A program made the translations under genes and the position numbers. The notes below the pieces were generated by a model. The model saw nothing but the letters and a program-made list of their open reading frames with translations, was not told where the DNA came from and ran no database searches. This document shows positions 15,912 through 56,368 of a DNA stretch of 64,000 bases, piece after piece (positions within the stretch are counted from its first letter, which is position 1; each line of letters starts with the position of its first letter). Location: positions 124,001 to 188,000 of the IMG/VR virus record IMGVR_UViG_3300026292_000003, one strand, 5' to 3'.

Positions 15912-15986
15912 GGTCCCTTCGTCTATCGGTTAGGACACATGGTTTTCATCCATGAAAGAGGAGTTCGATTCTCCTAGGGACTACCA
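15912..15986 (+). tRNA. tRNA-Glu(UUC)
   Basis: Cloverleaf, Glu-type D-arm gtcta..ggac, loop ttttcat, CCA. Confidence 0.95.
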
Positions 15987-21792: not shown

Positions 21793-21840
21793 GGTTGACA
21801 TTTATACCAAGATGTCTTATTATATATGTATAGTTAGAAA
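21793..21840 (+). repeat. 48-bp direct repeat copy 1 containing a sigma70 promoter
   Basis: ggttgacatttataccaagatgtcttattatatatgtatagttagaaa is identical at 24163; TTGACA-17-TATTAT. Confidence 0.92.
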
Positions 21841-22085: not shown

Positions 22086-22348
22086 TGAGACATTTTAAAA
22101 TTAATCCATATTTGGTTAAAAAAGGTTTTTATGTTAGTTCAATGTATTGGGGAGATTTACCCGGTGATGGATTTAAACTTATTTCAAGTGATGTTGTAGC
22201 AGGTCCTTTTAAAACTGCTGAAAGAGCACACGAAATTATGGAAAAGAATTTTAATTCTAATCCAATGGAATATGCAGTACACGGTCCAGCTAAAACTCCA
22301 AATGGAGATATTTGGTATAACAAAAATTACTATGGGGAGATTGTTTAG
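22085..22348 (+). CDS. Early hypothetical protein
   Basis: 87 aa, coupled. Confidence 0.7.
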   Translation: MRHFKINPYLVKKGFYVSSMYWGDLPGDGFKLISSDVVAGPFKTAERAHEIMEKNFNSNPMEYAVHGPAKTPNGDIWYNKNYYGEIV

Positions 22349-24162: not shown

Positions 24163-24210
24163 GGTTGACATTTATACCAAGATGTCTTATTATATATGTA
24201 TAGTTAGAAA
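24163..24210 (+). repeat. 48-bp direct repeat copy 2 containing a sigma70 promoter
   Basis: Identical to 21793-21840. Confidence 0.92.
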
Positions 24211-26226: not shown

Positions 26227-26814
26227 ATGCTTATACCAACAGTAATAGAAACAACGGGTCGCGGTGAACGTGCATACGACATTTACAGTCGTTTGCTTAA
26301 AGACCGAATTGTAATGCTTAATGGCGAAGTTAACGACCATTCAGCTCAATTAATAGTAGCACAGATGCTATTTTGTGAGTCACAGAATAATGCAGAAGAT
26401 ATAAATTTTTATATCAATAGCCCAGGCGGTGCAGTAACCGCAGGTCTTGCAATTTACGATACAATGCAGTTTATTAAATCTCCAGTAAGCACAATCGTAT
26501 TAGGTCAGGCTTGTAGTATGGGTAGTTTTCTTGCAATGGCAGGAGAACCAGGTAAACGTAATATATTACCTAATGCTAGAACTATGATTCACCAACCAAG
26601 TGGCGGTGCAGGTGGACAAGCTACAGATATGGAAATACAAGTAAAAGAGATTATTAAAATAAAAGAGAAATTAACAAAAATTTATGAAAAGCATAACACC
26701 GCTAATAAGTCATATGATGAGTTAAGCCAAGCTATGGAGAGAGACAATTATCTAAGTGCAGACGAAGCAGTAGCCTTCGGTTTAGCTGATAAAGTAGTTT
26801 CTAGTAAAACATAG
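26227..26814 (+). CDS. clpP: ATP-dependent Clp protease proteolytic subunit
   Basis: [23 protein letters not shown] (Ser), MIHQP (His), ERDNY (Asp). Confidence 0.97.
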
Positions 26815-26891
26815 TACTTTTTAAATCTTAAATATTGAATAAATACATGGCATAGACTATATCTATGTTATTAAAAGAATTGTGAAATTAT

Positions 26892-27251
26892 ATGTATACT
26901 TACAATGCGAAACTAATCAGGGTCATTGATGGTGATACTGTAGATTTAGAAATCGATCTAGGGTTTGATCTATCTATTAGACAGCGACTTAAACTATATG
27001 GTGTAGGTACACCTGATAGTAGATCAGCTGATACTGATACAAAACAAAAAGGCTTAGAAGCTAAACAACGTCTTACTGAATTACTACCAAGACAGTTTAA
27101 GATTACCACTATCCTTAATAAAAGAGGAAAGTATGGTAGAGTGTTAGGTACTATATTCCTAACAGATAAAGATACAGGTAAAGAAGTAAACGTTAACGAA
27201 CTAATGGTCACAGAAGGCCATGCAGTTAAGTATACTATTCAAGGGAAATAA
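26892..27251 (+). CDS. SNase-like nuclease
   Basis: VIDGDTVD, KYGRVLG, VNELMVTEGHA. Confidence 0.85.
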   Translation: MYTYNAKLIRVIDGDTVDLEIDLGFDLSIRQRLKLYGVGTPDSRSADTDTKQKGLEAKQRLTELLPRQFKITTILNKRGKYGRVLGTIFLTDKDTGKEVNVNELMVTEGHAVKYTIQGK

Positions 27252-27254
27252 TAT

Positions 27255-29024
27255 ATGAGGTATTTTGGTTATTGGACAATATTAGTAGCATTGGCAATCA
27301 GTGCAGTAGCGGCCTACTACAGTATCGTTGGCCTAGTTGCTATATTTTCTGCGGCTATGATACCTATTATTATCATGGGTTCCGTATTAGAAATTGGTAA
27401 ACTAACGTCGGCAGTTTGGTTACACTTAAATTGGCGGCAGGCACCCATTCTTATTAAAACGTATCTATCCGTGGCAGTATTGTTGCTTATGTTTATCACA
27501 AGTATGGGTATATTTGGCTTTTTAAGTAAAGCACATATCCAGCAAACAAGTCTAGCCACGGAGAACGTAGCACAAATAGAAATTATTGAAGATAGTATTG
27601 TTAGAATCAAACAAGACGTAGTTAGATTTGAAAATAAAATTAAAGAATATGAGAACAAAGATGATAAAATTGATACTACAATACAAGATAAGATTGCACT
27701 AGAGCAAGAAAGAATTAATACCGCATATGACGGTGTTAATCCTTCTATTGAAGAGTTAAACAAACGTATTGAAAAGCAGTTAGCTGACAGAGAAAAGACT
27801 ATTGAACCATACACACGTGAATTAGATAAGATTCAAAGTGATTTAGCATTAATAGATCAATATGTAGCAGATGAAGAAATTAAAAAGCTACAAGGTATGA
27901 TTGGTGCTAGGCAAGATGGTAGATATGGTAGTAGAACTGCTAAAGCAGTTAAAGAGTATAGAGAAACTTTAAATACACGTAAAGACGAAATTTTAAAAAT
28001 TATAAACAACATAAAAACACAGGAAGATCCAGTAATTACTGATGCTAGAAATGAGATCAAGAGACTAAGAGCATTAGCAGAACAACAGATTGCTGATTCA
28101 AATGAATTGATTACTAGACTCAGATCACAGTTAGGCCAGGGGCAAGTAGAAGATAGTACAGAAGAGATAATACTATTAAGAGATAATATTAATGCATCTA
28201 ACACAGAACTCAGCGAATTATATACTAAAAAAATTGCGTTAGAGGGAGAGAGTAGACAATTAGAAGCAGAAGTAGGCCCGGTTAAATATATTGCAGAATT
28301 AATATATGGCGACGAAGCAACAAGAAATATGCTGGAAGACGCCGTTAGATTTGTTATGTTAATTCTTGTGTTTGTTTTTGACCCGTTGGCCATTGTACTT
28401 GTTATTTCAGGTATCATATTGGTAGAAAGGAATGCCAGGCCAGGCAAAAAGACAAAAATCTTAAATGAAAAAACAGTACAAGAAGAACAAGCTAAACCTA
28501 TCAAAGACAGCGACATCGGAGAAAATGATACAGATATTGAGAGCGGGCCAGAAGCTACCGAAGAGTCTGATGTACAAGATGAAATTCTGGAACAAGAAGA
28601 AGTAATTGAACGTGTTCCTATGACAGAGGAAGAAGAGTATGCCAATGCAGGTATCACTAAAGAAGAAGCAGAAAAAGATCCTGAAATCTACAAAGACGAA
28701 GAAGGCAAAGAATATACAGTTGATGCAAAAACTGGAGAACGTAAGTATGTAATCAACAAAGTACAATGGGAACTAAATAAAAAAGAGAGAGCGGCGGCAA
28801 GAAAAGAAAAGAAACAATTAGTAGATAAAATTGTTGCTGAAATGAGAAGTACAGGAAGTTGGCCAGGTACAAGCTATATGGAAGGCGAAGGTGTTGTTAA
28901 AAAGAAAATTGAACAAATATTTGCCGACGATGCATCTTTAGAGTTAAAAGAACTTATGTCAAGAGCAGATGATTCAGTACTACAAGAAGTATATAACGAA
29001 ATATTAAAAGATACTAAAAAATGA
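27255..29024 (+). CDS. Membrane protein with long coiled coil and acidic C-tail
   Basis: N-terminal TMs, coiled coil, EVGPVKYIAELIYG and FVFDPLAI second TM block. Confidence 0.8.
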   Translation: MRYFGYWTILVALAISAVAAYYSIVGLVAIFSAAMIPIIIMGSVLEIGKLTSAVWLHLNWRQAPILIKTYLSVAVLLLMFITSMGIFGFLSKAHIQQTSLATENVAQIEIIEDSIVRIKQDVVRFENKIKEYENKDDKIDTTIQDKIALEQERINTAYDGVNPSIEELNKRIEKQLADREKTIEPYTRELDKIQSDLALIDQYVADEEIKKLQGMIGARQDGRYGSRTAKAVKEYRETLNTRKDEILKIINNIKTQEDPVITDARNEIKRLRALAEQQIADSNELITRLRSQLGQGQVEDSTEEIILLRDNINASNTELSELYTKKIALEGESRQLEAEVGPVKYIAELIYGDEATRNMLEDAVRFVMLILVFVFDPLAIVLVISGIILVERNARPGKKTKILNEKTVQEEQAKPIKDSDIGENDTDIESGPEATEESDVQDEILEQEEVIERVPMTEEEEYANAGITKEEAEKDPEIYKDEEGKEYTVDAKTGERKYVINKVQWELNKKERAAARKEKKQLVDKIVAEMRSTGSWPGTSYMEGEGVVKKKIEQIFADDASLELKELMSRADDSVLQEVYNEILKDTKK

Positions 29025-29473
29025 AATTAGATAATAGTTCTTATACGGTTACTCCTCCAGATCTAATGTTAACAGAACACGGTGTAAGTATTCTAGTTTC
29101 TAGTACCGACGAAAAGTTAATAAAAAAAGTAAAAGATATATTTGAAAAATATATCGCAACAAGCATTGTATTCTATATACAACAAAAACCAACAAACTCA
29201 AATACCCTACCATGGCTATGGAATGTATCAAAAACTTGTGAATTTATGATCATTGATCTTGATACCTGTGCAGAACCAGATATAATTGCAGGATTAATGA
29301 AATCAAGAGACGGTGAGAATACTGTACTATTTTACAGTGATAAGTACACTAGAAGAGATACAATAAAACTAATAAACGCAACAGGCGAAAATTTAGTAGT
29401 CACTAGGATGGAAGATATACATAACTATATAAGGTTACAAATGAACCCAGAGTATTTTGATGAGACCAAATGA
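29021..29473 (+). CDS. Hypothetical protein
   Basis: 150 aa, coupled. Confidence 0.7.
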   Translation: MKLDNSSYTVTPPDLMLTEHGVSILVSSTDEKLIKKVKDIFEKYIATSIVFYIQQKPTNSNTLPWLWNVSKTCEFMIIDLDTCAEPDIIAGLMKSRDGENTVLFYSDKYTRRDTIKLINATGENLVVTRMEDIHNYIRLQMNPEYFDETK

Positions 29474-30671
29474 TATAATCTGCAATTTTTGCGGAAAAAG
29501 TAGAACCCAAGTAAAAAAATTATTAGCAGGTGAGAATTCTAATCACATCTGTTCAGATTGCGTTGAGCTATGTTATGGTATTCTACAAAACAATGAAGTT
29601 AAAATAGAAAACACAATTCAAAAGAAATTTGTTCTTCCTACACCTAGAGAAATACACAAACATTTAGATGATTATGTTATAAGTCAAGATAAAGCAAAAA
29701 AGACTTTAAGTGTAGCAGTATATAATCATTATAAGAGAATAACATCAAATACAAAAACAAAATTACAAAAAGGCAACGTGTTTATGGCAGGTCCTACAGG
29801 AACTGGTAAAACACTAATGGCACAAACACTAGCCAATCATTTAGATGTACCATTTGTAGTTACTGATGCTACAGTTATTACAGAAAGTGGATACGCAGGT
29901 GAAGATGCAGAAGTGTTAATACACAAATTGTTTCAAGCGGCAGATTATGATATAGAAAGAGCAGAACGTGGAATAATATATATTGACGAAATAGATAAAA
30001 AAGCAAAACGTAATGATTTTGTTAGTTTAAGCAGAGATGTAAGTGGAGAAGGAGTTCAACAAAGTTTATTAAAACTAATAGAAGGTTCTAAAGTAACAGT
30101 ACCTAACAAGCCTCAAAGTAACCCAGAAAAAGTAGTTGTTGATACAACAAATATATTGTTTATTGTTGGTGGTGCATTTGTTGGGTTAGATGAAGTAGTT
30201 GCTAATAGACTTGGTAAATCAAAAATTGGTTTTAATGGCGAAGAAGGACATAAGATAGAAAATTGGACAGATTACTTACAAACTAAAGACTTGGTAAAGT
30301 ATGGATTAATACCAGAGTTTATTGGTAGATTTGCAAGTACTAACGTGTTAAGTAATTTAACCAAGGAAGACCTGGTAAAGATATTAATAGAACCAAAAGA
30401 TGCTATAGTAGAGCAGATCAAAGAGTTATTTTTACTTGACAAAATACAAATAGAGTTTAAAATGGAAGCATTGGAAGAGGTAGCAGATATAGCAATAAAA
30501 GAAGAAATTGGAGCCAGAGGGTTACGTAAGATACTCGATGGTGCATTACTTGAATTGCAATATAGATTACCAGAATTATTTAACGAAGGTATAAGAAAAA
30601 TTATTATTACAAAGAATGTTATTTCTAAAAACGAAGAACCACACTATATCAAAGGCAAAAATGCAACATAA
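29457..30671 (+). CDS. clpX: ATP-dependent Clp protease ATP-binding subunit ClpX
   Basis: C4 zinc finger, GPTGTGKT, IDEIDK, RDVSGEGVQQ and IGF loop. Confidence 0.96.
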   Translation: MMRPNDIICNFCGKSRTQVKKLLAGENSNHICSDCVELCYGILQNNEVKIENTIQKKFVLPTPREIHKHLDDYVISQDKAKKTLSVAVYNHYKRITSNTKTKLQKGNVFMAGPTGTGKTLMAQTLANHLDVPFVVTDATVITESGYAGEDAEVLIHKLFQAADYDIERAERGIIYIDEIDKKAKRNDFVSLSRDVSGEGVQQSLLKLIEGSKVTVPNKPQSNPEKVVVDTTNILFIVGGAFVGLDEVVANRLGKSKIGFNGEEGHKIENWTDYLQTKDLVKYGLIPEFIGRFASTNVLSNLTKEDLVKILIEPKDAIVEQIKELFLLDKIQIEFKMEALEEVADIAIKEEIGARGLRKILDGALLELQYRLPELFNEGIRKIIITKNVISKNEEPHYIKGKNAT

Positions 30672-31182
30672 ACGTTTTAAGAGAAAAGATCTGAAGCCTT
30701 TATATACTGCTAACGAAAGAATTAGATTTCCAGAAATTAGAGTTTCCTTACCAGATGGCGATAGTCAGGTCATGTCTACAAAGGAAGCCTTAGCAAAAGC
30801 AAAAGAAATGCAGTTAGACTTAATACTAATAGCTGAAAAAGCACAGCCACCAGTATGTAGAATAGTCTCACTCAATAAACATTTGTATGAGCTAAAGCAA
30901 AAAGAAAAACTGGCTAAAAAGAAACAACGCGAAAGCATTGTAGAAGTCAAAGAAATACGTATGGGTGTTAATATTGATACTCATGATTTGGAAACAAAAG
31001 CTAATATGGCTCGTAAGTTCTTAGACAAAAATAATAAACTAACAGTTATAGTGACAATGAAAGGCAGAGAACGTAGTAGGCCGGAGTCTGCTAAAGAAGT
31101 ACTAAATACATTTGCTGATAAACTTGGAATTAAATACGAGCAAGTCAGTATTCAGAGTCACAGAATAACTGGAAAAACATAG
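30661..31182 (+). CDS. infC: Translation initiation factor IF-3
   Basis: NERIR..IRV, LDLILIAEKAQPPVCRI, KEIRMGVNIDTHD, KGRE; ATG 30661 preferred. Confidence 0.92.
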   Translation: MQHKRFKRKDLKPLYTANERIRFPEIRVSLPDGDSQVMSTKEALAKAKEMQLDLILIAEKAQPPVCRIVSLNKHLYELKQKEKLAKKKQRESIVEVKEIRMGVNIDTHDLETKANMARKFLDKNNKLTVIVTMKGRERSRPESAKEVLNTFADKLGIKYEQVSIQSHRITGKT

Positions 31183-35013: not shown

Positions 35014-35058
35014 TACCATTGCTCATAAACTATAGTGTTAACTAGCATAAATAGTAGT

Positions 35059-36030
35059 ATGAGCAAGGTACATTTACTATCACAAATTATTACAAGTTTA
35101 CAACAGGAAACTACTCAGCAAGGCAAATATAACATATTAAGCCAATATGAAAAAGAAGCTATTCTGAAAAGAGTAGTAAGTATAGCCTATAATCCTTGGA
35201 TAGATTTAGAAATGCAAAACTTTGAACCCAAAAGAATGGGCAAAAAGTTTGGTATGAGTATACCTAAATTTTTACATATCATTGATGATATGATTGAAGA
35301 TAAATTCACACAAAAAGAAAAAGAGTTTTCTTGTCAAATGGCAATGATGCATATAAATGTTACAGAAGCAGAGTTGTTTATTAAGTTAGTTAGGCAAGAG
35401 TTAGATTTAGGATTAACAGACGAAACTATTAATAAAGTTTGGCCTGGGCTTGTAATGAGTTATCCTATAAGTTACCCAAGTGCAAAAGATTATAAATCGT
35501 TTAATCAATTTCCAGCCGCGGTACAGCCAGTTAGTAGAGGACTAAGAGTAAATATTATAATTCACAAAAATACAGTATCATACAAGGACAAGCTAGGGCA
35601 GGACATATTAGGTTGGGAAATATACAATGAACAATTTATTAATCTTGCACAAGGGAACAATACAGTATTTGATGGTCACGCAGTAGTAGCAAAAGGTCCA
35701 CAAATAGTTGAAACAGATAATCAAAAAGTATTAGAAGCAGATCCTAAAGACGTTAGATTTATGTTATGGGATGTAATTAGATTTGATGGATTTATAAAAG
35801 GTGAAGATACTAGAGTTGGTTATAACTGGCGTCATAACGGCATAGAACATATGCAGATACTAGCAATAGAGAAAAATAAACAACCTTGTTATGATTTAGT
35901 ACGTGCTGACCTTGTAGGTAGTCAAGAACAATTAGAACTTTCAGTAAGTAAAATGAAACCTTGTGTTATTAAAGCATTAGATGGTACGTGGAAACACGGT
36001 ATTGACAATTCGCAAATTATTATTAATTAA
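35059..36030 (+). CDS. Inactive T4-type DNA-ligase-like protein
   Basis: Ligase-type N-terminal domain; motif I reads QPVSRG rather than QxKxDG; no OB domain; ATG 35059 preferred. Confidence 0.65.
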   Translation: MSKVHLLSQIITSLQQETTQQGKYNILSQYEKEAILKRVVSIAYNPWIDLEMQNFEPKRMGKKFGMSIPKFLHIIDDMIEDKFTQKEKEFSCQMAMMHINVTEAELFIKLVRQELDLGLTDETINKVWPGLVMSYPISYPSAKDYKSFNQFPAAVQPVSRGLRVNIIIHKNTVSYKDKLGQDILGWEIYNEQFINLAQGNNTVFDGHAVVAKGPQIVETDNQKVLEADPKDVRFMLWDVIRFDGFIKGEDTRVGYNWRHNGIEHMQILAIEKNKQPCYDLVRADLVGSQEQLELSVSKMKPCVIKALDGTWKHGIDNSQIIIN

Positions 36031-37734: not shown

Positions 37735-38259
37735 TTGAAACAAGTAAAAGATACAATTAATAATTTCTTTAAATGGGTAAAAGGTACAGAATTAGTAGAG
37801 CTAACAGATATAGATGTTTCTGAAGATCCTGTAAGACCTGAATTAACACTTGAGTGGAGATTATCTGCTGAAAGAAAGATTTATGGACTTAAATTTGAGG
37901 ATAGCATAGAAGCAATAGTTTGTGTAGCATATACTAATGAAGTACCAATTACTGTTAGAGAAATGGACTATATGAGTCAGGTAGCTTGTCAAGAAAACCA
38001 ATCTGGTTCTATTGCAGTAGCTTATACAGTATGGTCAAGAAAAAGAGGAGCAGGTAAAGAGATAATTAATAAGTTACACGAGTTTTTAGTTAGCGAAAGA
38101 ACTGCGACGAAACGATTAGTAACATTGTCTCCTCTCACGCCTATGGCAACACATTTTCATATTAAAAATGGTGCAAAACAAATAAGTATTAATGATACTA
38201 CACAAAATTTTGAATATAGTTTAGTAAATTCAAAAACAAATTATAGTACATATAATTAA
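37735..38259 (+). CDS. GNAT-like hypothetical protein
   Basis: YTVWSRKRGAGKEII acetyl-CoA-loop-like motif; TTG start. Confidence 0.55.
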   Translation: MKQVKDTINNFFKWVKGTELVELTDIDVSEDPVRPELTLEWRLSAERKIYGLKFEDSIEAIVCVAYTNEVPITVREMDYMSQVACQENQSGSIAVAYTVWSRKRGAGKEIINKLHEFLVSERTATKRLVTLSPLTPMATHFHIKNGAKQISINDTTQNFEYSLVNSKTNYSTYN

Positions 38260-38279
38260 AAAATTAATCCACAATTCGG

Positions 38280-38309
38280 TTGACAATTAAACTTTTACGT
38301 GTATAAATA
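38280..38309 (+). promoter_or_regulatory. Overlapping sigma70-like and late promoters for tmRNA
   Basis: TTGACA-16-TATAAA with TATAAATA at 38302-38309. Confidence 0.65.
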
Positions 38310-38314
38310 TACAA

Positions 38315-38600
38315 GTAAGCGATGAAGCGACTTAACGGTAGACTGGACCTCGGGGCAGTACCGAGCAGGTCCACCATAAACACTTTGTAGTTACCAGAAC
38401 TAGATGGTACCCTAAAGTAAGGACAGACGCAGAGTGTTTATGATGGGCCTGAATTAGGATCGACAGATATTATAGGGAAGTGGAGTTTACCGGGTGATTG
38501 CGTAATTGATCAAATTTTATAAACGCAGAAGATAATTTTGCAATAGCGGCCTAATTTAGGCACGTAGGGGTGGGAACTACCTGGCAACAGAAGTGCCACT
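38315..38600 (+). ncRNA. ssrA: Circularly permuted two-piece tmRNA (alphaproteobacterial type)
   Basis: Acceptor piece ends caggtcc-a-cca (38366-38376) with T-arm ctcgg/ggcagta/ccgag; 68-nt intervening segment; coding piece starts gggcctg (38445) with G3-U70; tag AEDNFAIAA* at 38525-38554. Confidence 0.9.
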
Positions 38601-38665
38601 GTATTCTTTAGAATTCAGTTACTACAAAAAGATAAACTTCTTATCTTTATATCAAGGAAATATAT

Positions 38666-39259
38666 ATGAAATATATAATGACAGCGGCGTTCGTCGCTTT
38701 TATGTTTTCTACTGCTAACGCAGAAGATTACAACAATACATCAATAACTATGGCCGCAGAAGGACCTGAATATGGTGTAGAATTATCAACAAATGACACT
38801 ACAAGAAAAGTAAGTGTCTACAATACTAATGGCGCATTAGATCTAGGAGTACAGTTATTAGATAACGGCACTAACACAGATTTTAATGTATCTGTTGGTA
38901 AGACTATCGATAGAAATATTGGAATGGCAGAATCACCATTAGCTACAGTTTATGTATCTGCAGAAGCTGAGTATAATTGGGGCGATAGTTTTACTAAAAA
39001 CGAAATGCATTTTACTCCTAAAATTGGAGCTAAAAAAGCTATTGGAAACCTAACACCATTTGGTGAAATAGGTTACGGTCTAAAATCAATTGAAGGTGAT
39101 TATCTTGATATTGATAGAGACACACCGTTTGCTGAAATCGGTACATCAGTTGGTCTAACTGATAATACGTCATTAAAAGCATCAGTAACACAATCAATGA
39201 ATACTGATTGGGAAAAGACTGATCGTGAAATTGGACTAAAGCTGACAGTTCAGTTTTAA
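38666..39259 (+). CDS. Putative outer-membrane beta-barrel protein
   Basis: Signal peptide (ANA), alternating amphipathic strands and C-terminal Phe. Confidence 0.7.
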   Translation: MKYIMTAAFVAFMFSTANAEDYNNTSITMAAEGPEYGVELSTNDTTRKVSVYNTNGALDLGVQLLDNGTNTDFNVSVGKTIDRNIGMAESPLATVYVSAEAEYNWGDSFTKNEMHFTPKIGAKKAIGNLTPFGEIGYGLKSIEGDYLDIDRDTPFAEIGTSVGLTDNTSLKASVTQSMNTDWEKTDREIGLKLTVQF

Positions 39260-39269
39260 TTAATTAGGT

Positions 39270-39304
39270 TGCGGGTTACCCTTTACACAAAAACCCGCAT
39301 TTCC
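39270..39304 (+). terminator. Putative terminator
   Basis: tgcgggtt/aacccgca stem, short U-run. Confidence 0.55.
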
Positions 39305-39340
39305 GATAAATATTATAGACAGGCAAGAGGAGATTTTATC

Positions 39341-40420
39341 ATGCCGCCTAGAAATCATAAAAATTGGTTAGCAAAACCAAACGTAGAATATGTAAGTAGT
39401 GAAATATATTCAGATCAAAAAATTTTCGAAGAAGAAATAAAACATATCTTTAGTAAGGTATGGGTACCAGTATGCCATACAAGTGAAATGAATATGACTG
39501 GTTGTTTTAGAACAACACAAATTGCATTTCAAAATATAATTGTTATTAAATTTAGTAGTGGAATTGTTAGAGCATTTCATAATAAAGATGTAACAAAAGT
39601 ATCAGGTATGGATATGTCGCTTTGTTATCATGCATTAAGTTGGAAAGAATTGCCGTGCGAAATAAAGCATGGTGGAATGGTATGGGTAACTTTAGATACA
39701 GAAACAACACAGAGTGTAGATCAATGGACGGCTGGTGCATTTGATTGTATTAGTGATGCAATTGATGCAGAAGACTTAGAAGTATTTCATTACCATAAAG
39801 CAATTATACCAACAAACTATAAACTATGGCATGATACAAATAGTGAATTTTATCATGACTTTATGCATTATTTTAATAGAGTAACTGGTTTTAATGATGA
39901 ATATTTTGCTAGAAAAAATATTCCATTTGATAACGGTCACGTAAATGTAAGTAGCTTTACAGTTAATTATACAGAATTTAATAAAGATGGTGACCGAGGA
40001 GAATTAAGTTTTCCTAACTTACCACCAAACCAATGGTATATGGTAGACTTGTTTCCAGGGTTTAATTTTAATTTGCGTGGTAGTGCGTATCGTAGTGATA
40101 GTGTTACTCCACTAGGGCCTAATAGCACACTTATAGAGTTTAGGGGCTATGGGCTAGAAAAAGATACTAAAGAAGAACGTGAAACTCGTATCAAACATCA
40201 CAATACTATATGGGGACCTTTTGGACGTAATTTGCACGAAGACTTAATTGGAGTTACAGGGCAAGGAGTATCAATGGCAGAAGGCACAGAAAAAAGAAAC
40301 ATTTTACATGGTAGGCACGAAAATGGAACTATACATGATGAGGTTGGTATGAGGCATTATTACGCAGAGTGGGGAAAACACGTAAACTTAGATCCTTCTA
40401 ATCCTATTATTAGTACTTGA
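39341..40420 (+). CDS. Ring-hydroxylating oxygenase alpha-subunit-like protein (MsmA-like), Rieske motif degenerate
   Basis: IFSKVW, RAFHN, NYKLWHDTNSEFYHDFMH and NLHED; no CxH-x(15-26)-CxxH; AGGAG RBS then ATG 39341. Confidence 0.8.
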   Translation: MPPRNHKNWLAKPNVEYVSSEIYSDQKIFEEEIKHIFSKVWVPVCHTSEMNMTGCFRTTQIAFQNIIVIKFSSGIVRAFHNKDVTKVSGMDMSLCYHALSWKELPCEIKHGGMVWVTLDTETTQSVDQWTAGAFDCISDAIDAEDLEVFHYHKAIIPTNYKLWHDTNSEFYHDFMHYFNRVTGFNDEYFARKNIPFDNGHVNVSSFTVNYTEFNKDGDRGELSFPNLPPNQWYMVDLFPGFNFNLRGSAYRSDSVTPLGPNSTLIEFRGYGLEKDTKEERETRIKHHNTIWGPFGRNLHEDLIGVTGQGVSMAEGTEKRNILHGRHENGTIHDEVGMRHYYAEWGKHVNLDPSNPIIST

Positions 40421-40450: not shown

Positions 40451-40527
40451 GGACCATTAGCTCAGCTGGATAGAGCGCCTGTCTACGGAACAGGAGGCCA
40501 GGAGTTCGAATCTCTTATGGTCCGCCA
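40451..40527 (+). tRNA. tRNA-Arg(ACG)
   Basis: Cloverleaf, A20, loop ctacgga, CCA. Confidence 0.96.
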
Positions 40528-43843: not shown

Positions 43844-43920
<77 letters not shown>

Positions 43921-43926
43921 ATTTAT

Positions 43927-44012
43927 GCGAGTGTGGCGGAATAGGTAGACGCAACGGACTTAAAATCCGTTATCTTTATGGTGTGTGGGTTCGAGTCCCT
44001 CCACTCGCACCA
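43927..44012 (+). tRNA. tRNA-Leu(UAA)
   Basis: Cloverleaf with long variable arm, loop cttaaaa, CCA. Confidence 0.96.
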
Positions 44013-45937: not shown

Positions 45938-47125
45938 TTGACTCAGAATAATCACAGCACTAGTTGGTGTCCTATACCGTTTAATGCTATTTCGTTTCAC
46001 CCAACCGGCAATTTAACTCGTTGTATGATGAGCAATACGCCGATGGGTGAAACCTTTGACAGCCCTCAGATGCAAAAACTGCGTCATGATATGTTGGCTG
46101 GCACCTGGGATAAAGAAGGGTGTATGACTTGTTGGAAAAAAGAACAACAAGGTAATATAAGTCAAAGACAAAAGTGGTTACAACGTAGTCCCTCAGATTT
46201 CAAAAATACAGATGGATTTATAAAACCAAAAATAACAGGAAACCCTGTTAATCACCTTTTTATTAACTATAGCAATATATGTAATTTTAAGTGTAGAATG
46301 TGTGGACCAGATTATAGTACTAGTCTAATACCAGAGCATAAACATTTACATACAATAGGATTACGTAAAGAAGTAAAAATAGAAAATATTAAAAATAGAA
46401 ATTTTATTAATACATATCTAAAAGAAAATCCAGAAAGTTTAAAAGATGTAACTAGTATATGGATAACAGGTGGCGAACCCTTTATGGACGATAACTGTTA
46501 TGATTTAATTGACATACTAGCTGAAAATGGAAATGAATTTGAAACAGATATGGTTATTACTACAAATGGCTCTAAAGTAGATTTAGATAAGTTACAAAAA
46601 TTTGAGAATTTAAAATTCTTTGAATTAGATTTAAGTATTGATGCACCTAATACTATGTTTGAGTATATGCGTAGTGCAGGCGTATTTACTTGGGATCAAA
46701 TGAGTAAGTTAATTGATGATTTAACTTATTTTAAAAAACAGAATAGTAGTTGGTTTCATATGTGTTTTAATGCTAGTATACAAGCATATAATTACGATAC
46801 AATACTTGAATTTGATTCAGTATGTAGGAAAGCAGGAGCATTGAACAATACTAGAATGTTAATATTTCCAGAACATTTTAGACTCAACGTACTACCTTAT
46901 AAATATAGAAAAGAACAATTTGATAAAATCTATGATTATAAAGTAGTAAATGATCCAAGGTTTAAAAGAACTCATATGGATATATGCAAAAATCTTTTAC
47001 AAGAACAAGCAAATGAAACTGTAATCAGTAGATTTAAAGAACTTACGATAGCACAAGACAAGTATAGAAAAATGTCTATAAAAGACTTCCATCCACGGTT
47101 AGCGGAGTTTATATATGAAAAATAA
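45938..47125 (+). CDS. Radical SAM protein with N-terminal twitch/SPASM-like domain
   Basis: CNFKCRMC, GGEPF, TTNG; N-terminal WCPIPF..RC..C..C. Confidence 0.88.
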   Translation: MTQNNHSTSWCPIPFNAISFHPTGNLTRCMMSNTPMGETFDSPQMQKLRHDMLAGTWDKEGCMTCWKKEQQGNISQRQKWLQRSPSDFKNTDGFIKPKITGNPVNHLFINYSNICNFKCRMCGPDYSTSLIPEHKHLHTIGLRKEVKIENIKNRNFINTYLKENPESLKDVTSIWITGGEPFMDDNCYDLIDILAENGNEFETDMVITTNGSKVDLDKLQKFENLKFFELDLSIDAPNTMFEYMRSAGVFTWDQMSKLIDDLTYFKKQNSSWFHMCFNASIQAYNYDTILEFDSVCRKAGALNNTRMLIFPEHFRLNVLPYKYRKEQFDKIYDYKVVNDPRFKRTHMDICKNLLQEQANETVISRFKELTIAQDKYRKMSIKDFHPRLAEFIYEK

Positions 47126-48428
47126 TCAAAATGAAAACGGCTTATGGAGATTTGATCCAAAAAAGCACGTAGTTCCTGCTGACCAAATAGAAACAAAAGT
47201 AGTTGAAAACGATCAATGGAAAAATATACACAGTAACAGTTGGTGTCCAATTCCGTTTAATACAATAAGCTGGCATCCTAGTGGGCATATATCAAGATGT
47301 ATGATGAGTGACGACAATATGGGAACTCATTATGACAGTGAACATATGCAAAGGTTAAGAAGAGATATGTTAGCTGGTAAGTGGGATACTTATGGATGTA
47401 CTAGCTGTCTTAACAAAGAAAAGAAAGGTTATCGTAGTCAACGTATGAGTTGGCTAAGACATGATAAGATTAAGCATCTAGGAAATCCAGAACCTTATCG
47501 TAATCCAAAATTAACCGGTAATCAGATAAGTCATTTGTTTATTAATTTTTCAAATGTATGTAATTTTAAATGTAGAATGTGTAGTGCAAACTTTAGTAAT
47601 AGTTTGATACCTGAAAACAAGCATATGTTAGAAAAATTTCCACTTGAATATAAAAAGGTTCCACTTCAGAATCAAAAAAACTTTAATGATATTATTGGAT
47701 ATTTAGAAAAGAACTTAGACATACTACCTGGTATAAAAAGTATTTGGATGACAGGAGGAGAGCCCTTCATGACTGATGATCCATACAAACTGATTGACTT
47801 AATTGTAGAACACGGCAAGCCAGAAGAACTTGATATAGTTATTACTACAAATGGATCAAAATTAGATTTTGAAAAGTTAGAAAAGTTTAACAAAGTTAAA
47901 AAATTAACATTAGATTTAAGTATTGATGCAGTAGGACCTTTGTTTGAATATATGAGAAGTAATAAGGTTTATACTTGGAGTCAAATGGAAAATACTTGTG
48001 GTAAATTATATGAATATAAAAAAGTAAATAAGAAATGGTTTGATTTTTTTATTAATAGCAGTTACCAAATATTTAATTATGATAACTTATTAGAATTTTA
48101 CGATTTTATATATGATCATAAATGTGAAAGTAATATAAGAATGTTAATGTTTCCTGAACATTTTAGAGTGGGTAACTTGCCAAAAGTATTTAAAGATGAA
48201 GCTAGAGCAATGTGTGATAAGATAGAATTAAGGTATGGAAATAGAAATGTACATAAGATTAAAATTCTAGATGATATTAGAACTGCATTAGATATTGAAG
48301 AACCTTACTTACATAGAACTTTAAGAGTAGTACCAGAACAAGATAAATTTAGAGGAGTATACTTAACTGACTATCACGATAAACTAGCTGACTTAATATA
48401 TGGACCAAAACAATTATGCCTGTTTTAA
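47115..48428 (+). CDS. Radical SAM protein with N-terminal twitch domain (tandem paralogue)
   Basis: CNFKCRMC, GGEPF; closely similar to the upstream gene. Confidence 0.88.
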   Translation: MKNNQNENGLWRFDPKKHVVPADQIETKVVENDQWKNIHSNSWCPIPFNTISWHPSGHISRCMMSDDNMGTHYDSEHMQRLRRDMLAGKWDTYGCTSCLNKEKKGYRSQRMSWLRHDKIKHLGNPEPYRNPKLTGNQISHLFINFSNVCNFKCRMCSANFSNSLIPENKHMLEKFPLEYKKVPLQNQKNFNDIIGYLEKNLDILPGIKSIWMTGGEPFMTDDPYKLIDLIVEHGKPEELDIVITTNGSKLDFEKLEKFNKVKKLTLDLSIDAVGPLFEYMRSNKVYTWSQMENTCGKLYEYKKVNKKWFDFFINSSYQIFNYDNLLEFYDFIYDHKCESNIRMLMFPEHFRVGNLPKVFKDEARAMCDKIELRYGNRNVHKIKILDDIRTALDIEEPYLHRTLRVVPEQDKFRGVYLTDYHDKLADLIYGPKQLCLF

Positions 48429-52440: not shown

Positions 52441-52659
52441 ATGGCAAAACAAGAATCTATTAAATTTTCTGGTCGTGTGTTAGACTCGTTACCGGGTTCC
52501 TTTTTTAAAGTGGAACTAGATAACGGACACAAAATAACAGGTGTTATGAGTGGAAAGATCAGAAAAAATAATATCAAGATTTTGCCTGGCGATAAGGTTG
52601 ACATAGAAATGTCACCATACGATCTTAGTAAAGGTCGTATAGTTTTTAGGTATAAATAA
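52441..52659 (+). CDS. infA: Translation initiation factor IF-1
   Basis: MAKQESI..G.V...[34 protein letters not shown]. Confidence 0.96.
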
Positions 52660-52663
52660 AAAT

Positions 52664-53149
52664 ATGTTTGGAATATTTGGAAGACTAAAAGTTTATTTTA
52701 TAATGTTTGCGGCATTCGCAGTATTTGCCGGAGTCGCTTATTGGTACTATCAAAGTACACAAAAGCAGATTATAGCATATGCTAAAAATCAAGCAACATT
52801 AGAAACTACTGTAGAACTGCAAAAGCAGACTACATTAGCTCTACAAAAAGACCTAAAGAAAGCAAATGATGCATTAGTAACACTAACTGACGAATTTGCT
52901 GAAAGTAGAAAAAACGTTAAAGAATTGGAAACAATCTTTAATCAATCTAAAGATGGAACTAAAAGAGACTTCGGTGAAGAATCAATTAAGAACCCAGAAT
53001 ATATTGAGGGCGAAATTAATAAAGGTTCAAATCAAGTTTTCAGATGTTTTGAATTATTAAGTGGGCAGAAGCCTATGGAAGGTGATAAAAATGAAGAACA
53101 GTATATTAATTGTATTAATGGCACTACTAACTCTAACGGGTTGCAGTAG
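52664..53149 (+). CDS. Putative i-spanin (Rz-like)
   Basis: N-terminal TM plus coiled coil with C-terminal Cys; overlaps a lipoprotein gene. Confidence 0.65.
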   Translation: MFGIFGRLKVYFIMFAAFAVFAGVAYWYYQSTQKQIIAYAKNQATLETTVELQKQTTLALQKDLKKANDALVTLTDEFAESRKNVKELETIFNQSKDGTKRDFGEESIKNPEYIEGEINKGSNQVFRCFELLSGQKPMEGDKNEEQYINCINGTTNSNGLQ

Positions 53150-53453
53150 TCTAAAAGTACCACAAATACTAAAAGTTAACACAGCACCTATAGAGAAACA
53201 TTCTTTAAAACTCCCTAAGGTTGATCAATATGATGCAAGATCATTGGAGTGGATAGTTCTTACTCCTGACAATGTAGACGAAGTGTTTGCAAAACTAAAA
53301 GCTAATAACATAGACCTCGTACTTTTTGCTGTAACTGATGATGGATACCAAAACTTATCGCTTAATATGGCTGATATAATTAAATTGGTAAAACAACAAA
53401 AATCCATTATAGCGGCTTACGAAAAGTACTTGGACAATGAAGAAGCTCAATAA
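53091..53453 (+). CDS. Putative o-spanin (Rz1-like lipoprotein)
   Basis: [18 protein letters not shown] lipobox; GGAAGG RBS then ATG 53091. Confidence 0.7.
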
Positions 53454-54114
53454 TCCTTGGTATATTCTTGGCGTTGAACCTAACGCATCGCTTACCGCGA
53501 TAAAAAAAGCATATAAAAGATTAGCAATTAGAATGCACCCAGACAAAGGTGGCTCTGTAGCTGATTGGTTAAATGTAAGTCAAGCATATGAAAAGATTTT
53601 AAAGAAAGAACACGTACCTGTAAAGAAAGGTAAAGATGTTAAATATGTTGATATATACTTAACTATACAACAACAAATAAATGGTTTTGAAGGCTTTGTA
53701 GTAATAGATGAAGAAAAAGAATTATATTTAAAAGTAAAAATACCAGCAGGTGCATTAAGAAATGATAAGTTTAGAGTAATACACAATGCTAAAAAGTACA
53801 TTATAAATATTAAAGAAAAAGCAGATAAAGTCTTTACAAGACAAGGAAATAATGTTATAGTATATAAAAAGTTAGATATAATAGACATAATGAAACAAAA
53901 ACCGTTTGTTGTTATATCTCCTTTAGGTGAATATCTCGAAGTACAAATTCCACCAAATACAGATTCTGGAAGTATAATTGTCGTAAAAGGACAAGGCTTA
54001 TACAACAGAAGAACAAAGAAAAGAGGAAACTTAAGAATTAACGTGAAAGTAAATATACCCACAGTGAACAAAGATAATGTTCAACAAATTATAAAAAGAT
54101 TAAAAGATGACTGA
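53437..54114 (+). CDS. DnaJ/CbpA-like co-chaperone
   Basis: J-domain with HPD and DnaJ C-terminal domain (GQGL..RGNL); no zinc finger. Confidence 0.88.
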
Positions 54115-56368
54115 TATAGAAAAAATTGTTATAACTGCTATTAACCTAGCAAAGAAATTTAGACACGAGTATGTTACTATTGAACATTTGTCGGCTGTTA
54201 TATTAGATGACCCAGAAGTTCAAGCAATGTGTTATGAAGTACAAGCAGATCATGAACAGTTACAAATTTCATTAGTAAATTATTTAGAGCATGATTGTAA
54301 AGAATTAATAAAAAGTAAAAAAGAAGAACCTAATCCATTTAAGACTCAAATGTTAGAAAGGGTTTTTAACAGAGCATTAACTCAAGCATTGTTTCAAGGT
54401 AAGAAAGCAATTAATCAGTTAGATTTAGTATTAAGTATATTAGGTGAAGAACATAGTGTTGCGGCAACATATGCAGATCAATGTGGACTTAATAAAAATA
54501 AAGTTATGGCTTGGATGCAAGATACAGCTCAAGCACAAATTGATACAATATTTACAGCCATGCCACCAGGTATGGATCCTTATGGACACAATGGTCCACA
54601 AACTCCACTTGCAGTATTAAATCAATATTGTAATAATCTAAATGAAGCAAGTCAAGACTTTGATGATGTAGTAGGGCGTAGAGATGTGTTAAGAGATTTA
54701 GTTCAAACTGTAGCACGTAAGAAAAAATCAAATGCAGTATTAACAGGAGGCAGTGGTGTAGGTAAAACAGCCATTGTACAAGGATTAGCAAAATTAATTG
54801 TAGAAGGTAAAGTTCCTGAAGTTATAAAAAGTAAAACTGTATGGGAACTTGATATGACAAAACTAGTAGCTGGTACAAAATACAGAGGTGACTTTGAAGA
54901 ACGTATGAAGCAATTAGGAGAAGCATTACGAAAACAACCAGACATTATTTTATTCATAGATGAGATACATCAAATAATTGGTGCAGGTAGTACAAATCAA
55001 TCAATGGACGCAGGTAATATGTTAAAGCCTGCATTAGCAAGTGGAACATTAAAAGTTATTGGTGCTACAACAGATGAAGAATATAGAAGAGTATTTGAGA
55101 AAGAAACTGCATTAGCACGTAGGTTTACAAAAGTATCAGTAGATGAACCTAGTGTAAAAGATGCTAAAGAAGTATTAAAACATACTATAGTTTCTTATGA
55201 AGGATATCATGATGTAGAAATTACAGATGAGGCTTGTGAACTAGCAGTTGATTTAAGTCATCAATATATGTTTAATAAAAAGTTACCAGATAAAGCATTT
55301 GACATAGTTGATAGAGCCTGTGCATATAATACAATATTACCAGTAAAAGATAGATTAAAGGTTATTGGTGTAGATGAAATTAGAGCAGAAGTATCTAAAC
55401 TTACTACAATACCTGAAGAACATTTAGGACTTTCAAAAGATAAAGAAACTGCTACTAAACATAGCGAAGTAAGATCATTCTTAGAAAAAACTGTATTTGG
55501 ACAACAAGGTGCTATTAATCGTGTAGTTGATAGTATTACAGTTAGTATGGCAGGATTAAAAGATCCTGTTAAACCTATTGCAAGTTATTTGTTTACTGGT
55601 CCAACTGGTGTTGGTAAAACAGAATTAGCAAAAAGATTAGCACAAGCAATGACTATGAAACTGGTACGTTATGATATGGCAGAATATCAAGAACGTCATA
55701 CAGTATCAAAACTTATTGGATCACCTCCAGGATATGTAGGGTTTGCAGATGGAAAAGCAGGTGATGGTTTATTAATTACACAACTAGAAGATAATCCAAA
55801 TTGTGTACTATTATTAGACGAAGTAGAAAAAGCACACCCAGACTTAATGAGTGTATTATTAAGTTTATTAGACGAGGGTACAATTACAAGTAGTACTGGT
55901 AAAATAGTAAATGCAAAAAATGCAATAATTATTATGACTAGTAACTTAGGTGCCAGAGATGCGTCAATTAAAAGTATAGGTTTTAACGAAGAAACTTATA
56001 ATCACAAAGCAGTAGATGAAGCAATAAACAATTACTTCTCGCCAGAATTTCGTAATAGGCTTGATGGTATAGTAAAATTTAATTCATTATCACGTGAGAA
56101 TATGAACAGTATTGTTATTAAATTCTTAAATGAATTAGAGAGTTATGTAGCTCAAAGAAACATAGAAATTTCTTGGGGTCCTGCATTACAAACTATGCTA
56201 GAAGATAAAGGGTATGATCCTCAGATGGGAGCAAGGCCTTTAGCAAGACTAATTAACGAAAAAGTAAAACTTCCATTAGCTAAATACTTACTAGATAGAG
56301 AAGGTAAGAAAAAGCTAAACTTAACAGTTGATTGGAAGAAAGACGAGCTAGTAATTAATGGAAAATAA
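54107..56368 (+). CDS. clpA: ClpA-type AAA+ unfoldase
   Basis: Clp N-domain, two AAA modules (GSGVGKT, KYRG, FIDEIH; [18 protein letters not shown]), IGF loop; no ClpB M-domain. Confidence 0.9.

What the first reader, a model, noticed from the sequence alone, without database searches (positions are those of the whole stretch)
38315..38600. Phage-encoded circularly permuted (two-piece) tmRNA of alphaproteobacterial type
Seen: the tRNA-like 3' end (T-arm ctcgg-GGCAGTA-ccgag, caggtcc-A-CCA, ending 38376) lies upstream of the 5' end (GGGCCTG, 38445). The two give a 7-bp acceptor stem with G3-U70. The 68-nt intervening segment is closed by a 13-bp stem (cataaacactttg/cagagtgtttatg). cggtagact pairs with agtttaccg, and the tag reads AEDNFAIAA*. 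Known: permuted tmRNA with a GGCRGUA T-loop is characteristic of alphaproteobacteria. Inference: the phage supplies its own ribosome-rescue RNA from dual early and late promoters, which points to an alphaproteobacterial host. Standard one-piece tmRNA searches could miss it.
Basis: partly seen in the sequence, partly recalled or inferred. Interest (0 to 1): 0.85.

Follow-up and report, generated by a model that had tools for sequence, protein, structure and literature searches.

The report
Phage-borne two-piece tmRNA gene

Summary
ARAGORN calls a permuted tmRNA (38280-38645, tag AEDNFAIAA*). Rfam scores it at about twice the gathering threshold with both tmRNA_permuted (98.3 bits) and alpha_tmRNA (97.1 bits). 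All stated coordinates check out: CCA ends at 38376, G1 is at 38445, the acceptor stem has 7 bp with G3.U70, and a 13-bp stem closes the 68-nt intervening segment.

The carrier is a phage. The window is bases 124001-188000 of a 221.6-kb contig with tail sheath, T4 gp13/gp15 domains, terminase and a T4-like replication module.

In 32 related viral tmRNA genes the acceptor stem, T-arm, P2a and the precursor stem covary.

A TTGACA-N16-TATAAATA promoter precedes the gene. TATAAATA sits at the same distance in 48 of 99 viral homologues.

The host inference is weak. The closest cultured homologue, the Melnitz SsrA, belongs to a phage of a non-alphaproteobacterium.

No SmpB was found in 73% of the contig. 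ClpP, ClpX and a ClpA-like gene lie nearby.

Phage two-piece tmRNAs are published, so this is a new member of a known kind and of modest interest.

The parts
38280..38285 (+). -35-like box TTGACA of the tmRNA promoter
   Evidence: Sequence. Invariant TTGACA in the five closest viral homologues. A TTGACW box 15-17 nt before TATAAATA occurs in 39 of 99 viral tmRNA loci. TTGACA-N17-TAWAAT sites are enriched in the window, 15 found against 3.8 expected.
38302..38309 (+). TATAAATA box: T4-type late-promoter consensus, overlapping a TATAAA -10-like hexamer 16 nt after the -35 box
   Evidence: It ends 67 nt before the CCA end. The same box ends at -66 or -67 in most of the 48 of 99 viral homologues that carry it (background 0.0065 per 70 nt). 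In 121 kb of this contig there are 9 copies on the + strand and 1 on the - strand, against about 18 expected per strand. One lies 18 nt before the terminase gene. Function as a promoter is inferred.
38315..38376 (+). Predicted acceptor piece (62 nt): P2 strands, T-arm 38349-38365 with loop GGCAGUA, acceptor 3' strand 38366-38372, discriminator A 38373, encoded CCA 38374-38376
   Evidence: The Rfam RF04321 match starts at 38315. That is where a transcript from the TATAAATA box would be expected to start (inference). T-arm and acceptor pairs covary in 32 sequences.
38377..38444 (+). 68-nt intervening segment removed on maturation; closed by a 13-bp stem (38375-38387 with 38430-38442)
   Evidence: Fold z = -6.1. 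The stem is predicted on the 32-sequence alignment, and all 10 of its predicted pairs show a change on both sides in at least one sequence. Length varies from 5 to 224 nt among viral homologues. Excision itself was not tested.
38445..38606 (+). Predicted coding piece: 5' acceptor strand 38445-38451 (G3 = 38447), D-loop analogue with invariant AGG.UCGAC 38456-38464, P2 strands, tag frame, 3' conserved block ACCUGGCAACAGAA 38579-38592; the 3' end is approximate
   Evidence: The Rfam alpha_tmRNA match runs to 38602. Invariant columns are listed. A terminator-like hairpin lies at 38582-38598.
38525..38554 (+). Tag reading frame: resume codon GCA 38525, AEDNFAIAA, stop TAA 38552-38554; the stop lies in hairpin 38549-38553 with 38557-38561
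   Evidence: ARAGORN, direct reading and the MFE fold. Related viral genes keep the frame through synonymous changes, for example AAC/AAT and GCG/GCA between L072 and L057.
38338..38345 (+). Acceptor-piece strand of conserved helix P2a: 38343-38345 pairs with 38464-38466, and 38338-38340 pairs with 38468-38470
   Evidence: Standard pairs in 99% and 91% of cells in 32 sequences, with changes on both sides; shifted controls 6-60%. All six pairs form in the window.
38315..38319 (+). Acceptor-piece strand of distal P2 helix: GUAAG pairs with UUUAC 38486-38490
   Evidence: Standard pairs in 85% of cells, with changes on both sides at 5 of 5 pairs; shifted controls 24-48%. The Rfam RF04321 alignment gives the same pairing.
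26227..26814 (+). ClpP homologue (context: likely protease for tagged proteins)
   Evidence: Pfam CLP_protease E 1.2e-76. NCBIfam NF001368 291 bits, above the 249 cut-off. The Ser, His and Asp motifs align with solved ClpP.
29457..30671 (+). ClpX homologue (context), followed directly by an IF3 gene at 30616-31182
   Evidence: NCBIfam ClpX equivalog 502.6 bits, cut-off 359. Zinc finger and IGF loop are kept. The pore-1 loop is GYAG, and the RKH loop is replaced by QSN in a shorter loop. IF3 is TIGR00168, 131.8 bits.
54107..56368 (+). ClpA-like double-AAA+ unfoldase (context), preceded by a short DnaJ-like gene at 53437-54114
   Evidence: TIGR02639 ClpA 759.6 bits over its full length, but below the 993 equivalog cut-off. 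Clp_N and AAA_2 domains. DnaJ and DnaJ_C domains.

Best explanation
This is a functional ssrA gene of a large T4-related phage that encodes a two-piece tmRNA.

Shown:
- The gene has the permuted order, with the 3' half of the tRNA-like domain first and the 5' half plus the tag frame second.
- It matches the alphaproteobacterial tmRNA model over its full length.
- It keeps every element needed for function: G3.U70, the GGCAGUA T-loop, the GGAUCGAC D-loop analogue, the conserved resume context, an in-frame tag ending in AA, and the 3' conserved block.
- The helices of the tRNA-like domain and of the precursor covary among 32 viral homologues.

Inferred:
- A precursor of about 290 nt starts near 38315 from a composite TTGACA/TATAAATA promoter. 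This promoter could be used both by host sigma-70 polymerase and by T4-type late transcription.
- Host tRNA-processing enzymes cut it. RNase P cuts at G38445, and 3' trimming stops at the encoded CCA at 38376. The long helix made by the acceptor stem stacked on the 13-bp stem guides these cuts and releases the 68-nt loop.
- The acceptor stem and helix P2 hold the 62-nt acceptor piece and the coding piece of about 160 nt together.
- Host AlaRS charges the RNA with alanine.
- With SmpB, probably the host's, it enters ribosomes stalled on broken mRNAs and adds Ala-AEDNFAIAA. This frees the ribosome and marks the peptide for Clp proteases.
- The likely benefit is to keep ribosomes available and recycle amino acids while infection degrades host mRNA.
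For: - Detectors: with bit scores about twice the gathering scores.
- Anatomy.
- Covariation: 20 of 29 predicted pairs change on both sides, and G3.U70 is invariant. P2a and distal P2 are supported against shifted controls.
- Compensatory differences between the window and its nearest relatives L072 and L124 in P2a and distal P2.
- Of 128 pattern matches (the 127 loci fetched by pattern plus the window), 115 have the exact complementary 5' acceptor strand within 450 nt downstream.
- Conserved promoter boxes.
- Phage identity of the contig: sheath, T4 gp13 and gp15 domains, TerL, PolB, UvsX-like protein and endonuclease VII, and no integrase among the genes listed.
- Identical sequence in three assemblies.
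- Precedents: PMC9004378 and PMC7162821.
- ClpP, ClpX and a ClpA-like gene lie in the same window.
Against: - There is no expression, processing or charging data.
- No SmpB gene was seen in the 64-kb window or in the precomputed Pfam lists for record positions 59.9-221.6 kb, so function depends on a compatible host SmpB.
- In this sequence the minimum-energy pairing of the two pieces is not the family-conserved P2a. It is a competing 9-bp helix: -32.2 against -19.9 kcal/mol for the two core structures.
- The small hairpin conserved in relatives (ACGUUG-AAG-CAACGU) is degenerate here.
- The phage ClpX lacks the RKH loop and has GYAG in pore-1. In E. coli ClpX these loops contact the ssrA tag (my own knowledge of the ClpX literature). 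Degradation by the phage's own ClpXP is therefore uncertain.
Confidence: 0.85

Rival explanations
1. The RNA is functional, but ribosome rescue is not its main role. It would work as a phage-controlled tagging device tied to the phage's own Clp machinery. Its short, atypical tag would direct nascent host chains to phage ClpXP or ClpAP, either to remodel the proteome or to blunt host defences that cleave mRNA or tRNA.
For: - ClpP, ClpX, a ClpA-like gene and a DnaJ-like gene are in the same window.
- The tag has only 9 encoded residues and begins AED where most viral homologues begin ANDN.
- The ClpX substrate-contact loops differ from those of E. coli and of phage Phosso.
- Buchholz et al. suggested selective tagging of host proteins.
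Against: - Trans-translation tags whatever ribosome is stalled, so no selectivity mechanism is visible.
- The Clp genes lie 8-16 kb from the tmRNA gene and are not in one operon with it.
- Clp genes were found near the tmRNA gene in only a few viral homologues: ClpP in L006, ClpX in L121.
- The altered ClpX loops could equally mean that this ClpX does not recognise the tag at all.
Confidence: 0.1
2. The gene is a passenger or remnant. It would be a host ssrA copy picked up by chance or kept as an integration-site mimic, without function in the phage.
For: tmRNA genes are common integration sites, and fragments of them occur in prophages (PMC9004378; PMC4383910, listed). Some of the IMG/VR matches lie at contig ends and may be host DNA.
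Against: - The gene is complete, lies in the middle of a T4-related lytic-type genome, and no integrase appears in the listed genes.
- Its G+C fits the phage, and it differs from all cellular genomes sampled. Only the 32-nt tRNA-like segment matches, in high-G+C MAGs with tags of 20-24 residues.
- It carries a phage-type promoter box conserved at a fixed distance in half of the viral homologues.
- Its helices covary within the viral set.
Confidence: 0.04

Closest known systems
SsrA of Methylophilales phage Melnitz and of pelagimyophages (Buchholz et al. 2022, PMC9004378)
   Same: - A phage-encoded, two-piece, alphaproteobacterial-type tmRNA.
- It is the best match among 50,697 GenBank phage records: 75% identity over 51% of the query.
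- It has the same TTGACA-N17-TATAAATA upstream arrangement and the same taaacac... start of the intervening segment.
   Different: - Melnitz is a 141-kb member of Kyanoviridae. This contig is at least 221 kb, and its terminase and sheath are closest to the PA5oct, Phosso and Atu_ph07 jumbo phages.
- The Melnitz tag is the common ANDNY... type and longer.
- The glutamine riboswitch reported 3' of the Melnitz gene has no counterpart here. No Rfam hit other than tmRNA appears at E up to 1.
Cellular two-piece tmRNA of Alphaproteobacteria (Rfam RF01849; Caulobacter, Keiler, Shapiro and Williams 2000, cited)
   Same: Same permuted gene order, GGCRGUA T-loop, G3.U70, encoded CCA, resume context and 3' ACCUGGCAACAGAA block, with a full-length model match.
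   Different: - The tag is shorter: 9 encoded residues against 20-24 in the cellular genes that share the same acceptor arm.
- The gene is AT-rich.
- P2 is reduced or rearranged. The Rfam alignment marks several non-pairs in the 5- and 7-bp distal helices.
- The promoter box is of the T4 late type.
tmRNA plus Clp, IF3 and DnaJ gene sets of jumbo phages, e.g. Sinorhizobium phage AP-J-162 (PMC11242549); huge phages in general (Al-Shayeb et al. 2020, PMC7162821)
   Same: - A very large myovirus carrying a tmRNA, several Clp genes, DnaJ, and clpX directly next to the IF3 gene.
- The same clpX-infC adjacency occurs in phage Phosso and here.
- Huge phages are reported to carry tmRNAs and SmpB.
   Different: - Those phages are from soil, have higher G+C (47% for AP-J-162) and have known alphaproteobacterial hosts. 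Here G+C is 33% and the host is unknown.
- No SmpB has been found here so far.
- Whether the AP-J-162 tmRNA is permuted was not checked.
One-piece tmRNAs and the tag-less tmRNA-like RNA of mycobacteriophages (phage DS6A, mentioned in PMC11915505)
   Same: A phage-encoded member of the tmRNA family.
   Different: Those are standard or truncated gene forms. The DS6A form lacks a tag frame and inhibits host tmRNA, whereas this gene has a complete tag frame and the permuted form.

Membership tests
Permuted (two-piece) tmRNA, alphaproteobacterial type (Rfam RF04321 / RF01849) | Covariance-model score at or above the curated gathering score | tested here: met
   RF04321 scores 98.3 bits against 47. 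RF01849 scores 97.1 bits against 50. Both are full-length model matches.
Permuted (two-piece) tmRNA, alphaproteobacterial type (Rfam RF04321 / RF01849) | Circularly permuted gene order: T-arm, acceptor 3' strand and CCA lie upstream of the acceptor 5' strand and the tag frame | tested here: met
   CCA ends at 38376 and G1 is at 38445, 68 nt downstream.
Permuted (two-piece) tmRNA, alphaproteobacterial type (Rfam RF04321 / RF01849) | 7-bp acceptor stem with G3.U70 (the alanine identity element) and discriminator A followed by CCA | tested here: met
   38445-38451 pairs with 38366-38372, and G38447.U38370 is the G3.U70 pair. This U.G pair is invariant in 32 viral sequences, while four neighbouring pairs covary.
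Permuted (two-piece) tmRNA, alphaproteobacterial type (Rfam RF04321 / RF01849) | T-loop GGCRGUA, as in the alpha model consensus, rather than the GGUUCGAUU-type loop of the general permuted model | tested here: met
   GGCAGTA at 38354-38360. The two Rfam consensus lines are shown.
Permuted (two-piece) tmRNA, alphaproteobacterial type (Rfam RF04321 / RF01849) | Helix P2 joining the two pieces next to the tRNA-like domain | tested here: met
   P2a and distal P2 form in the window and covary in relatives. A competing 9-bp helix is lower in energy in this sequence, so the exact P2 geometry is not settled.
Permuted (two-piece) tmRNA, alphaproteobacterial type (Rfam RF04321 / RF01849) | Tag reading frame with a GCA resume codon in the conserved context, ending in hydrophobic residues plus AA, then a stop | tested here: met
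   UAUAAAC precedes GCA at 38525. The tag AEDNFAIAA is followed by TAA.
Permuted (two-piece) tmRNA, alphaproteobacterial type (Rfam RF04321 / RF01849) | Processing of one precursor into two stable RNAs; alanylation; SmpB-dependent tagging | not testable with these tools
   Needs RNA end mapping and biochemistry. Only the precursor stem and its covariation are shown.
Complete phage-encoded trans-translation system (tmRNA plus SmpB, as reported for some huge phages) | An SmpB gene in the same genome | tested here: inconclusive
   No SmpB hit among the scanned window ORFs of 110 aa or more. None appears in the precomputed Pfam lists for record positions 59.9-221.6 kb. The first 60 kb of the contig, and the extra sequence of the 330-kb contig, were not seen.
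T4-type late promoter | TATAAATA box about 6 nt before the transcript start, used with the phage late sigma factor gp55 and co-activator gp33 | tested here: inconclusive
   The box is present at 38302-38309 and conserved in position in 48 of 99 viral homologues. The motif is depleted and strand-biased in the contig and precedes the terminase gene. No gp55 or gp33 homologue was identified, and no transcript start is known.
Sigma-70 promoter | TTGACA, 16-18 nt, TATAAT with T at the last position | tested here: inconclusive
   The -35 box is perfect and the spacer is 16 nt, but the -10 hexamer is TATAAA, which lacks the final T. The consensus scan therefore does not list it. The -35 box is conserved in relatives.

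The most novel reading that the evidence does not exclude
The phage runs a private tag-and-degrade circuit. Its unusually short tag begins AED where most relatives have ANDN. This tag would have co-evolved with a phage ClpX whose tag-contact loops are altered (GYAG pore-1, and QSN in place of RKH). Peptides from stalled ribosomes would then go to the phage's own ClpXP or ClpAP, independently of host adaptor and protease specificity.
Probability: 0.1. Interest if true: 0.6.

Novelty: new member of a known kind. Interest (0 to 1): 0.3.

Why it matters
It adds a well-defined example to a published phenomenon: phages of aquatic bacteria that carry alphaproteobacterial-type two-piece tmRNAs. It also extends that phenomenon to a T4-related jumbo phage of the PA5oct/Atu_ph07 lineage, one that carries ClpP, ClpX, a ClpA-like unfoldase, DnaJ-like, IF1-like and IF3 genes and 11 tRNAs in the same 64 kb.

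Two by-products may help annotators. First, a composite TTGACA/TATAAATA promoter at a fixed distance marks about 40% of viral copies of this gene. Second, the helix that closes the intervening segment covaries strongly, so it can be used to place the processing sites.

The case also shows that tmRNA type alone is an unsafe host predictor.

Tried and rejected
- blastn of the gene against GenBank phages at E 1e-5 found nothing. Only at E up to 5 did the Melnitz SsrA appear.
- The single genome-contig scan used the window's acceptor arm. It returned 12 high-G+C alphaproteobacterial MAGs that share only the 32-nt tRNA-like segment, so it gave no host clue and no SAR11/SAR116 tag comparison.
- A DNA search with window 1-8000 hit only ribonucleotide reductase genes of many phages, which is uninformative. 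One call failed on a length limit.
- No Rfam family other than the tmRNA models reached E up to 1 in 38150-38750, so a glutamine riboswitch like the one reported for Melnitz is not detected.
- TATAAATA is not enriched in the window: 7 found against 16 expected. I first read this as evidence against a late promoter. The contig-wide depletion, the 9:1 strand bias and the copy before the terminase gene changed that reading.
- Covariation of the stop-codon hairpin and of the 3' pseudoknot could not be judged, because the MAFFT alignment is unreliable there.
- The small hairpin before the resume codon (38495-38498 with 38509-38512) is only moderately supported: 66% against 27-38% in shifted controls.
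- Walking the contig with all 12 look-ups reached 73% of it. SmpB, gp55 and gp33 were not found, but they cannot be excluded.
- I did not use the count of structure pairs, to avoid typing a 455-character structure string. The counts were made in a script instead.

Full report

Yes. Reading 38100-38800 confirms every element at the stated coordinates:
- T-arm 38349-38365 with loop GGCAGTA.
- Acceptor 3' strand 38366-38372, discriminator A, and CCA ending at 38376.
- 5' strand GGGCCTG at 38445-38451, giving seven pairs with G3.U70.
- A 68-nt intervening segment closed by a 13-bp stem (38375-38387 with 38430-38442).
- A frame from GCA at 38525 to TAA at 38552-38554 that reads AEDNFAIAA.

ARAGORN reports a permuted tmRNA with exactly this tag. 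Rfam at gathering thresholds reports tmRNA_permuted (98.3 bits against 47) and alpha_tmRNA (97.1 bits against 50), both over the full model. The precursor folds better than all 200 shuffles (z = -3.9). The acceptor-plus-intervening hairpin has z = -6.1. Bases 38270-38660 are identical in three independent assemblies.

**2. Is it in a phage?**

Yes. The window is record positions 124001-188000 of a 221,643-bp JGI contig, which is also in IMG/VR. Walking the contig showed these features:
- a tail sheath, T4 gp13 and gp15 domains, tail-fibre genes and a large terminase;
- a UvsX-like RecA, endonuclease VII, a DnaB-type helicase with primase, and a family-B polymerase;
- almost all genes on one strand, and no integrase.

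Terminase and sheath are closest to the jumbo phages PA5oct (54.5%), Phosso (50%) and Atu_ph07 (48%). A 329,779-bp ENA contig carries the same locus, so the genome may be larger still. G+C is about 33%.

**3. Comparative evidence**

ARAGORN finds permuted tmRNAs in 78 of those 120 loci. Of 128 pattern matches, counting later loci and the window, 115 have the exact complementary 5' strand within 450 nt downstream.

RNAalifold was run on 32 viral genes with intervening segments of similar length. It predicts the T-arm, the acceptor stem (U.G invariant), P2a and the stem that closes the intervening segment. Of 29 pairs, 20 show changes on both sides.

My own counts support two P2 helices:
- P2a: 38343-38345 with 38464-38466 and 38338-38340 with 38468-38470. 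These are standard pairs in 99% and 91% of cells.
- Distal helix: 38315-38319 with 38486-38490, paired in 85% of cells with changes on both sides at 5 of 5 pairs. Shifted controls give 24-48%.

It uses the same bases as P2a and the distal helix. It is nevertheless the minimum-energy pairing in this one sequence: -32.2 against -19.9 kcal/mol for the core structures. By my rough estimate, a 9-bp match with at most one G.U between the two pieces has a chance of about 0.17.

Compared with the nearest relatives L072 and L124, both strands of P2a and of the distal helix have changed in concert. This favours the conserved pairing, but the question is not closed.

**4. Promoter**

TTGACA (38280-38285), a 16-nt spacer and TATAAATA (38302-38309) precede the gene.
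- The consensus scan does not list the site, because the -10 hexamer TATAAA lacks the final T.
- TATAAATA ends 66-67 nt before the CCA end in most of the 48 of 99 distinct viral homologues that carry it. The background is 0.0065 per 70 nt.
- In 39 of the 99 loci a TTGACW box lies 15-17 nt upstream of it.
- The published Melnitz gene and the five closest relatives share the arrangement.
- In 121 kb of this contig the motif occurs 9 times on the coding strand and once on the other, against about 18 expected per strand. One copy lies 18 nt before the terminase start, next to a GGAGG. This is the pattern expected of a real T4-type late signal.
- TTGACA-N17-TAWAAT sites are enriched in the window, 15 found against 3.8 expected.

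The dual-promoter idea is therefore well supported comparatively but unproven. A start about six bases after the box would fall at 38315, where the Rfam permuted model begins.

**5. How it most likely works**

These steps are inferred from established knowledge of two-piece tmRNAs: Keiler et al. 2000, and the summary in PMC11915505.
1. One precursor is cut by tRNA-processing enzymes at G38445 and trimmed to the encoded CCA.
2. The two pieces stay paired through the acceptor stem and P2.
3. AlaRS charges the RNA through G3.U70.
4. With SmpB it rescues stalled ribosomes and adds Ala plus AEDNFAIAA.

No SmpB was found in the window ORFs scanned or in the Pfam lists for 73% of the contig. The host's SmpB is therefore the likely partner.

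The window also encodes:
- ClpP, with the catalytic motifs kept.
- ClpX, which scores above the NCBIfam equivalog cut-off and keeps the zinc finger and IGF loop.
- A ClpA-like unfoldase, a DnaJ-like protein, IF3 and an IF1-like protein.

The ClpX has GYAG instead of GYVG and lacks the RKH loop, whereas Phosso ClpX keeps GGRKN and GYVG. In E. coli these loops contact the ssrA tag (my own knowledge). Whether the phage's ClpXP degrades tagged proteins is therefore open.

**6. Host**

The alpha-type RNA and the clpX-infC adjacency shared with Sinorhizobium jumbo phages fit an alphaproteobacterial host. Three results weaken this:
- The nearest cultured homologue is the SsrA of Melnitz, a phage of OM43. 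Its authors used it as evidence for a past host switch.
- The hallmark proteins are closest to Pseudomonas phages.
- The cellular genomes that share the acceptor arm are unrelated high-G+C MAGs with tags of 20-24 residues.

**7. Novelty**

- Buchholz et al. 2022 describe two-piece alpha-type tmRNAs in Melnitz and pelagimyophages. They counted 53 two-piece tmRNAs among 18,146 phage genomes, 50 of them aquatic.
- Al-Shayeb et al. 2020 report tmRNAs and SmpB in huge phages.
- A Sinorhizobium jumbo phage with a tmRNA, Clp genes, DnaJ and clpX next to IF3 is published.
- The tmRNA database covers viral genomes.

This gene is a divergent new member, at most 75% identical to any deposited phage gene, with a short AED-type tag. 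Related IMG/VR contigs carry a similar 9-residue tag, ADENLALAA. Interest is modest.

Noticed in passing
window 13219-15986, 40451-40527, 43844-44012: Eleven tRNA genes. Eight lie in a cluster (Thr, Leu, Ala, Asn, Gly, Met, Asp, Glu), and there are also two Arg genes and one Leu gene. One TATAAATA box (15025-15032) lies 12 nt before tRNA-Asn.
   Followed up: partly
window 26227-31182 and 52441-56368: A set of proteostasis and translation genes: ClpP, ClpX, IF3 directly after ClpX, an IF1-like 72-aa gene (about 52441-52659), a short DnaJ-like gene and a ClpA-like unfoldase. The clpX-infC adjacency is shared with Sinorhizobium jumbo phages.
   Followed up: partly
window 29457-30671: The phage ClpX has GYAG instead of GYVG in the pore-1 loop. 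In place of the RKH loop it has a shorter loop reading QSN. The ClpX of phage Phosso keeps GGRKN and GYVG. This may mean changed substrate recognition.
   Followed up: partly
contig record 95415-216414 (window -28585 to 92414): TATAAATA is strongly depleted and strand-biased: 9 on the coding strand and 1 on the other, against about 18 expected on each. Five of the nine are intergenic, and one lies 18 nt before the terminase gene.
   Followed up: yes
window 21795-21823 and 24165-24193: Two identical 29-nt promoter-like sites (TTGACA, 17 nt, TATTAT) lie 2.4 kb apart, which suggests a duplicated regulatory segment.
   Followed up: no
window 38666-39259 and 39269-40420: A cyanophage-type outer-membrane beta-barrel gene (Pfam Phage_OMP) lies directly 3' of the tmRNA gene, here and in IMG/VR loci L027 and L113. 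The next gene, which has a ring-hydroxylating oxygenase alpha-subunit catalytic domain (Pfam PF00848), lies next to the tmRNA gene in several other viral loci, at 64-78% identity.
   Followed up: partly
window 45938-48428, 60806-61714; L145 6321-8703; L147 12142-13395: At least six radical SAM or SPASM-domain genes lie in the 3' third of the contig. Their function is unknown; peptide or nucleotide modification is possible.
   Followed up: no
window 9036-12178: A 545-aa protein with collagen-like repeats, which matches tail-fibre PHROGs only through that repeat region, is followed by an overlapping subtilisin-family (S8) protease gene.
   Followed up: no
window 22348-23460 and 35035-36030: Two separate ATP-dependent DNA ligase-like genes.
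   Followed up: no
L155 (ENA ERZ27245253 k141_1139821): A 329,779-bp contig from another study carries the identical tmRNA locus. The 221.6-kb JGI contig may therefore be an incomplete genome.
   Followed up: partly
IMG/VR loci L001-L127: Among viral alpha-type tmRNA genes the intervening segment ranges from 5 to 224 nt and the tags from 9 to 31 residues. Several 9-residue tags occur: ANESYALAA, ANANIALAA, ADENLALAA.
   Followed up: partly
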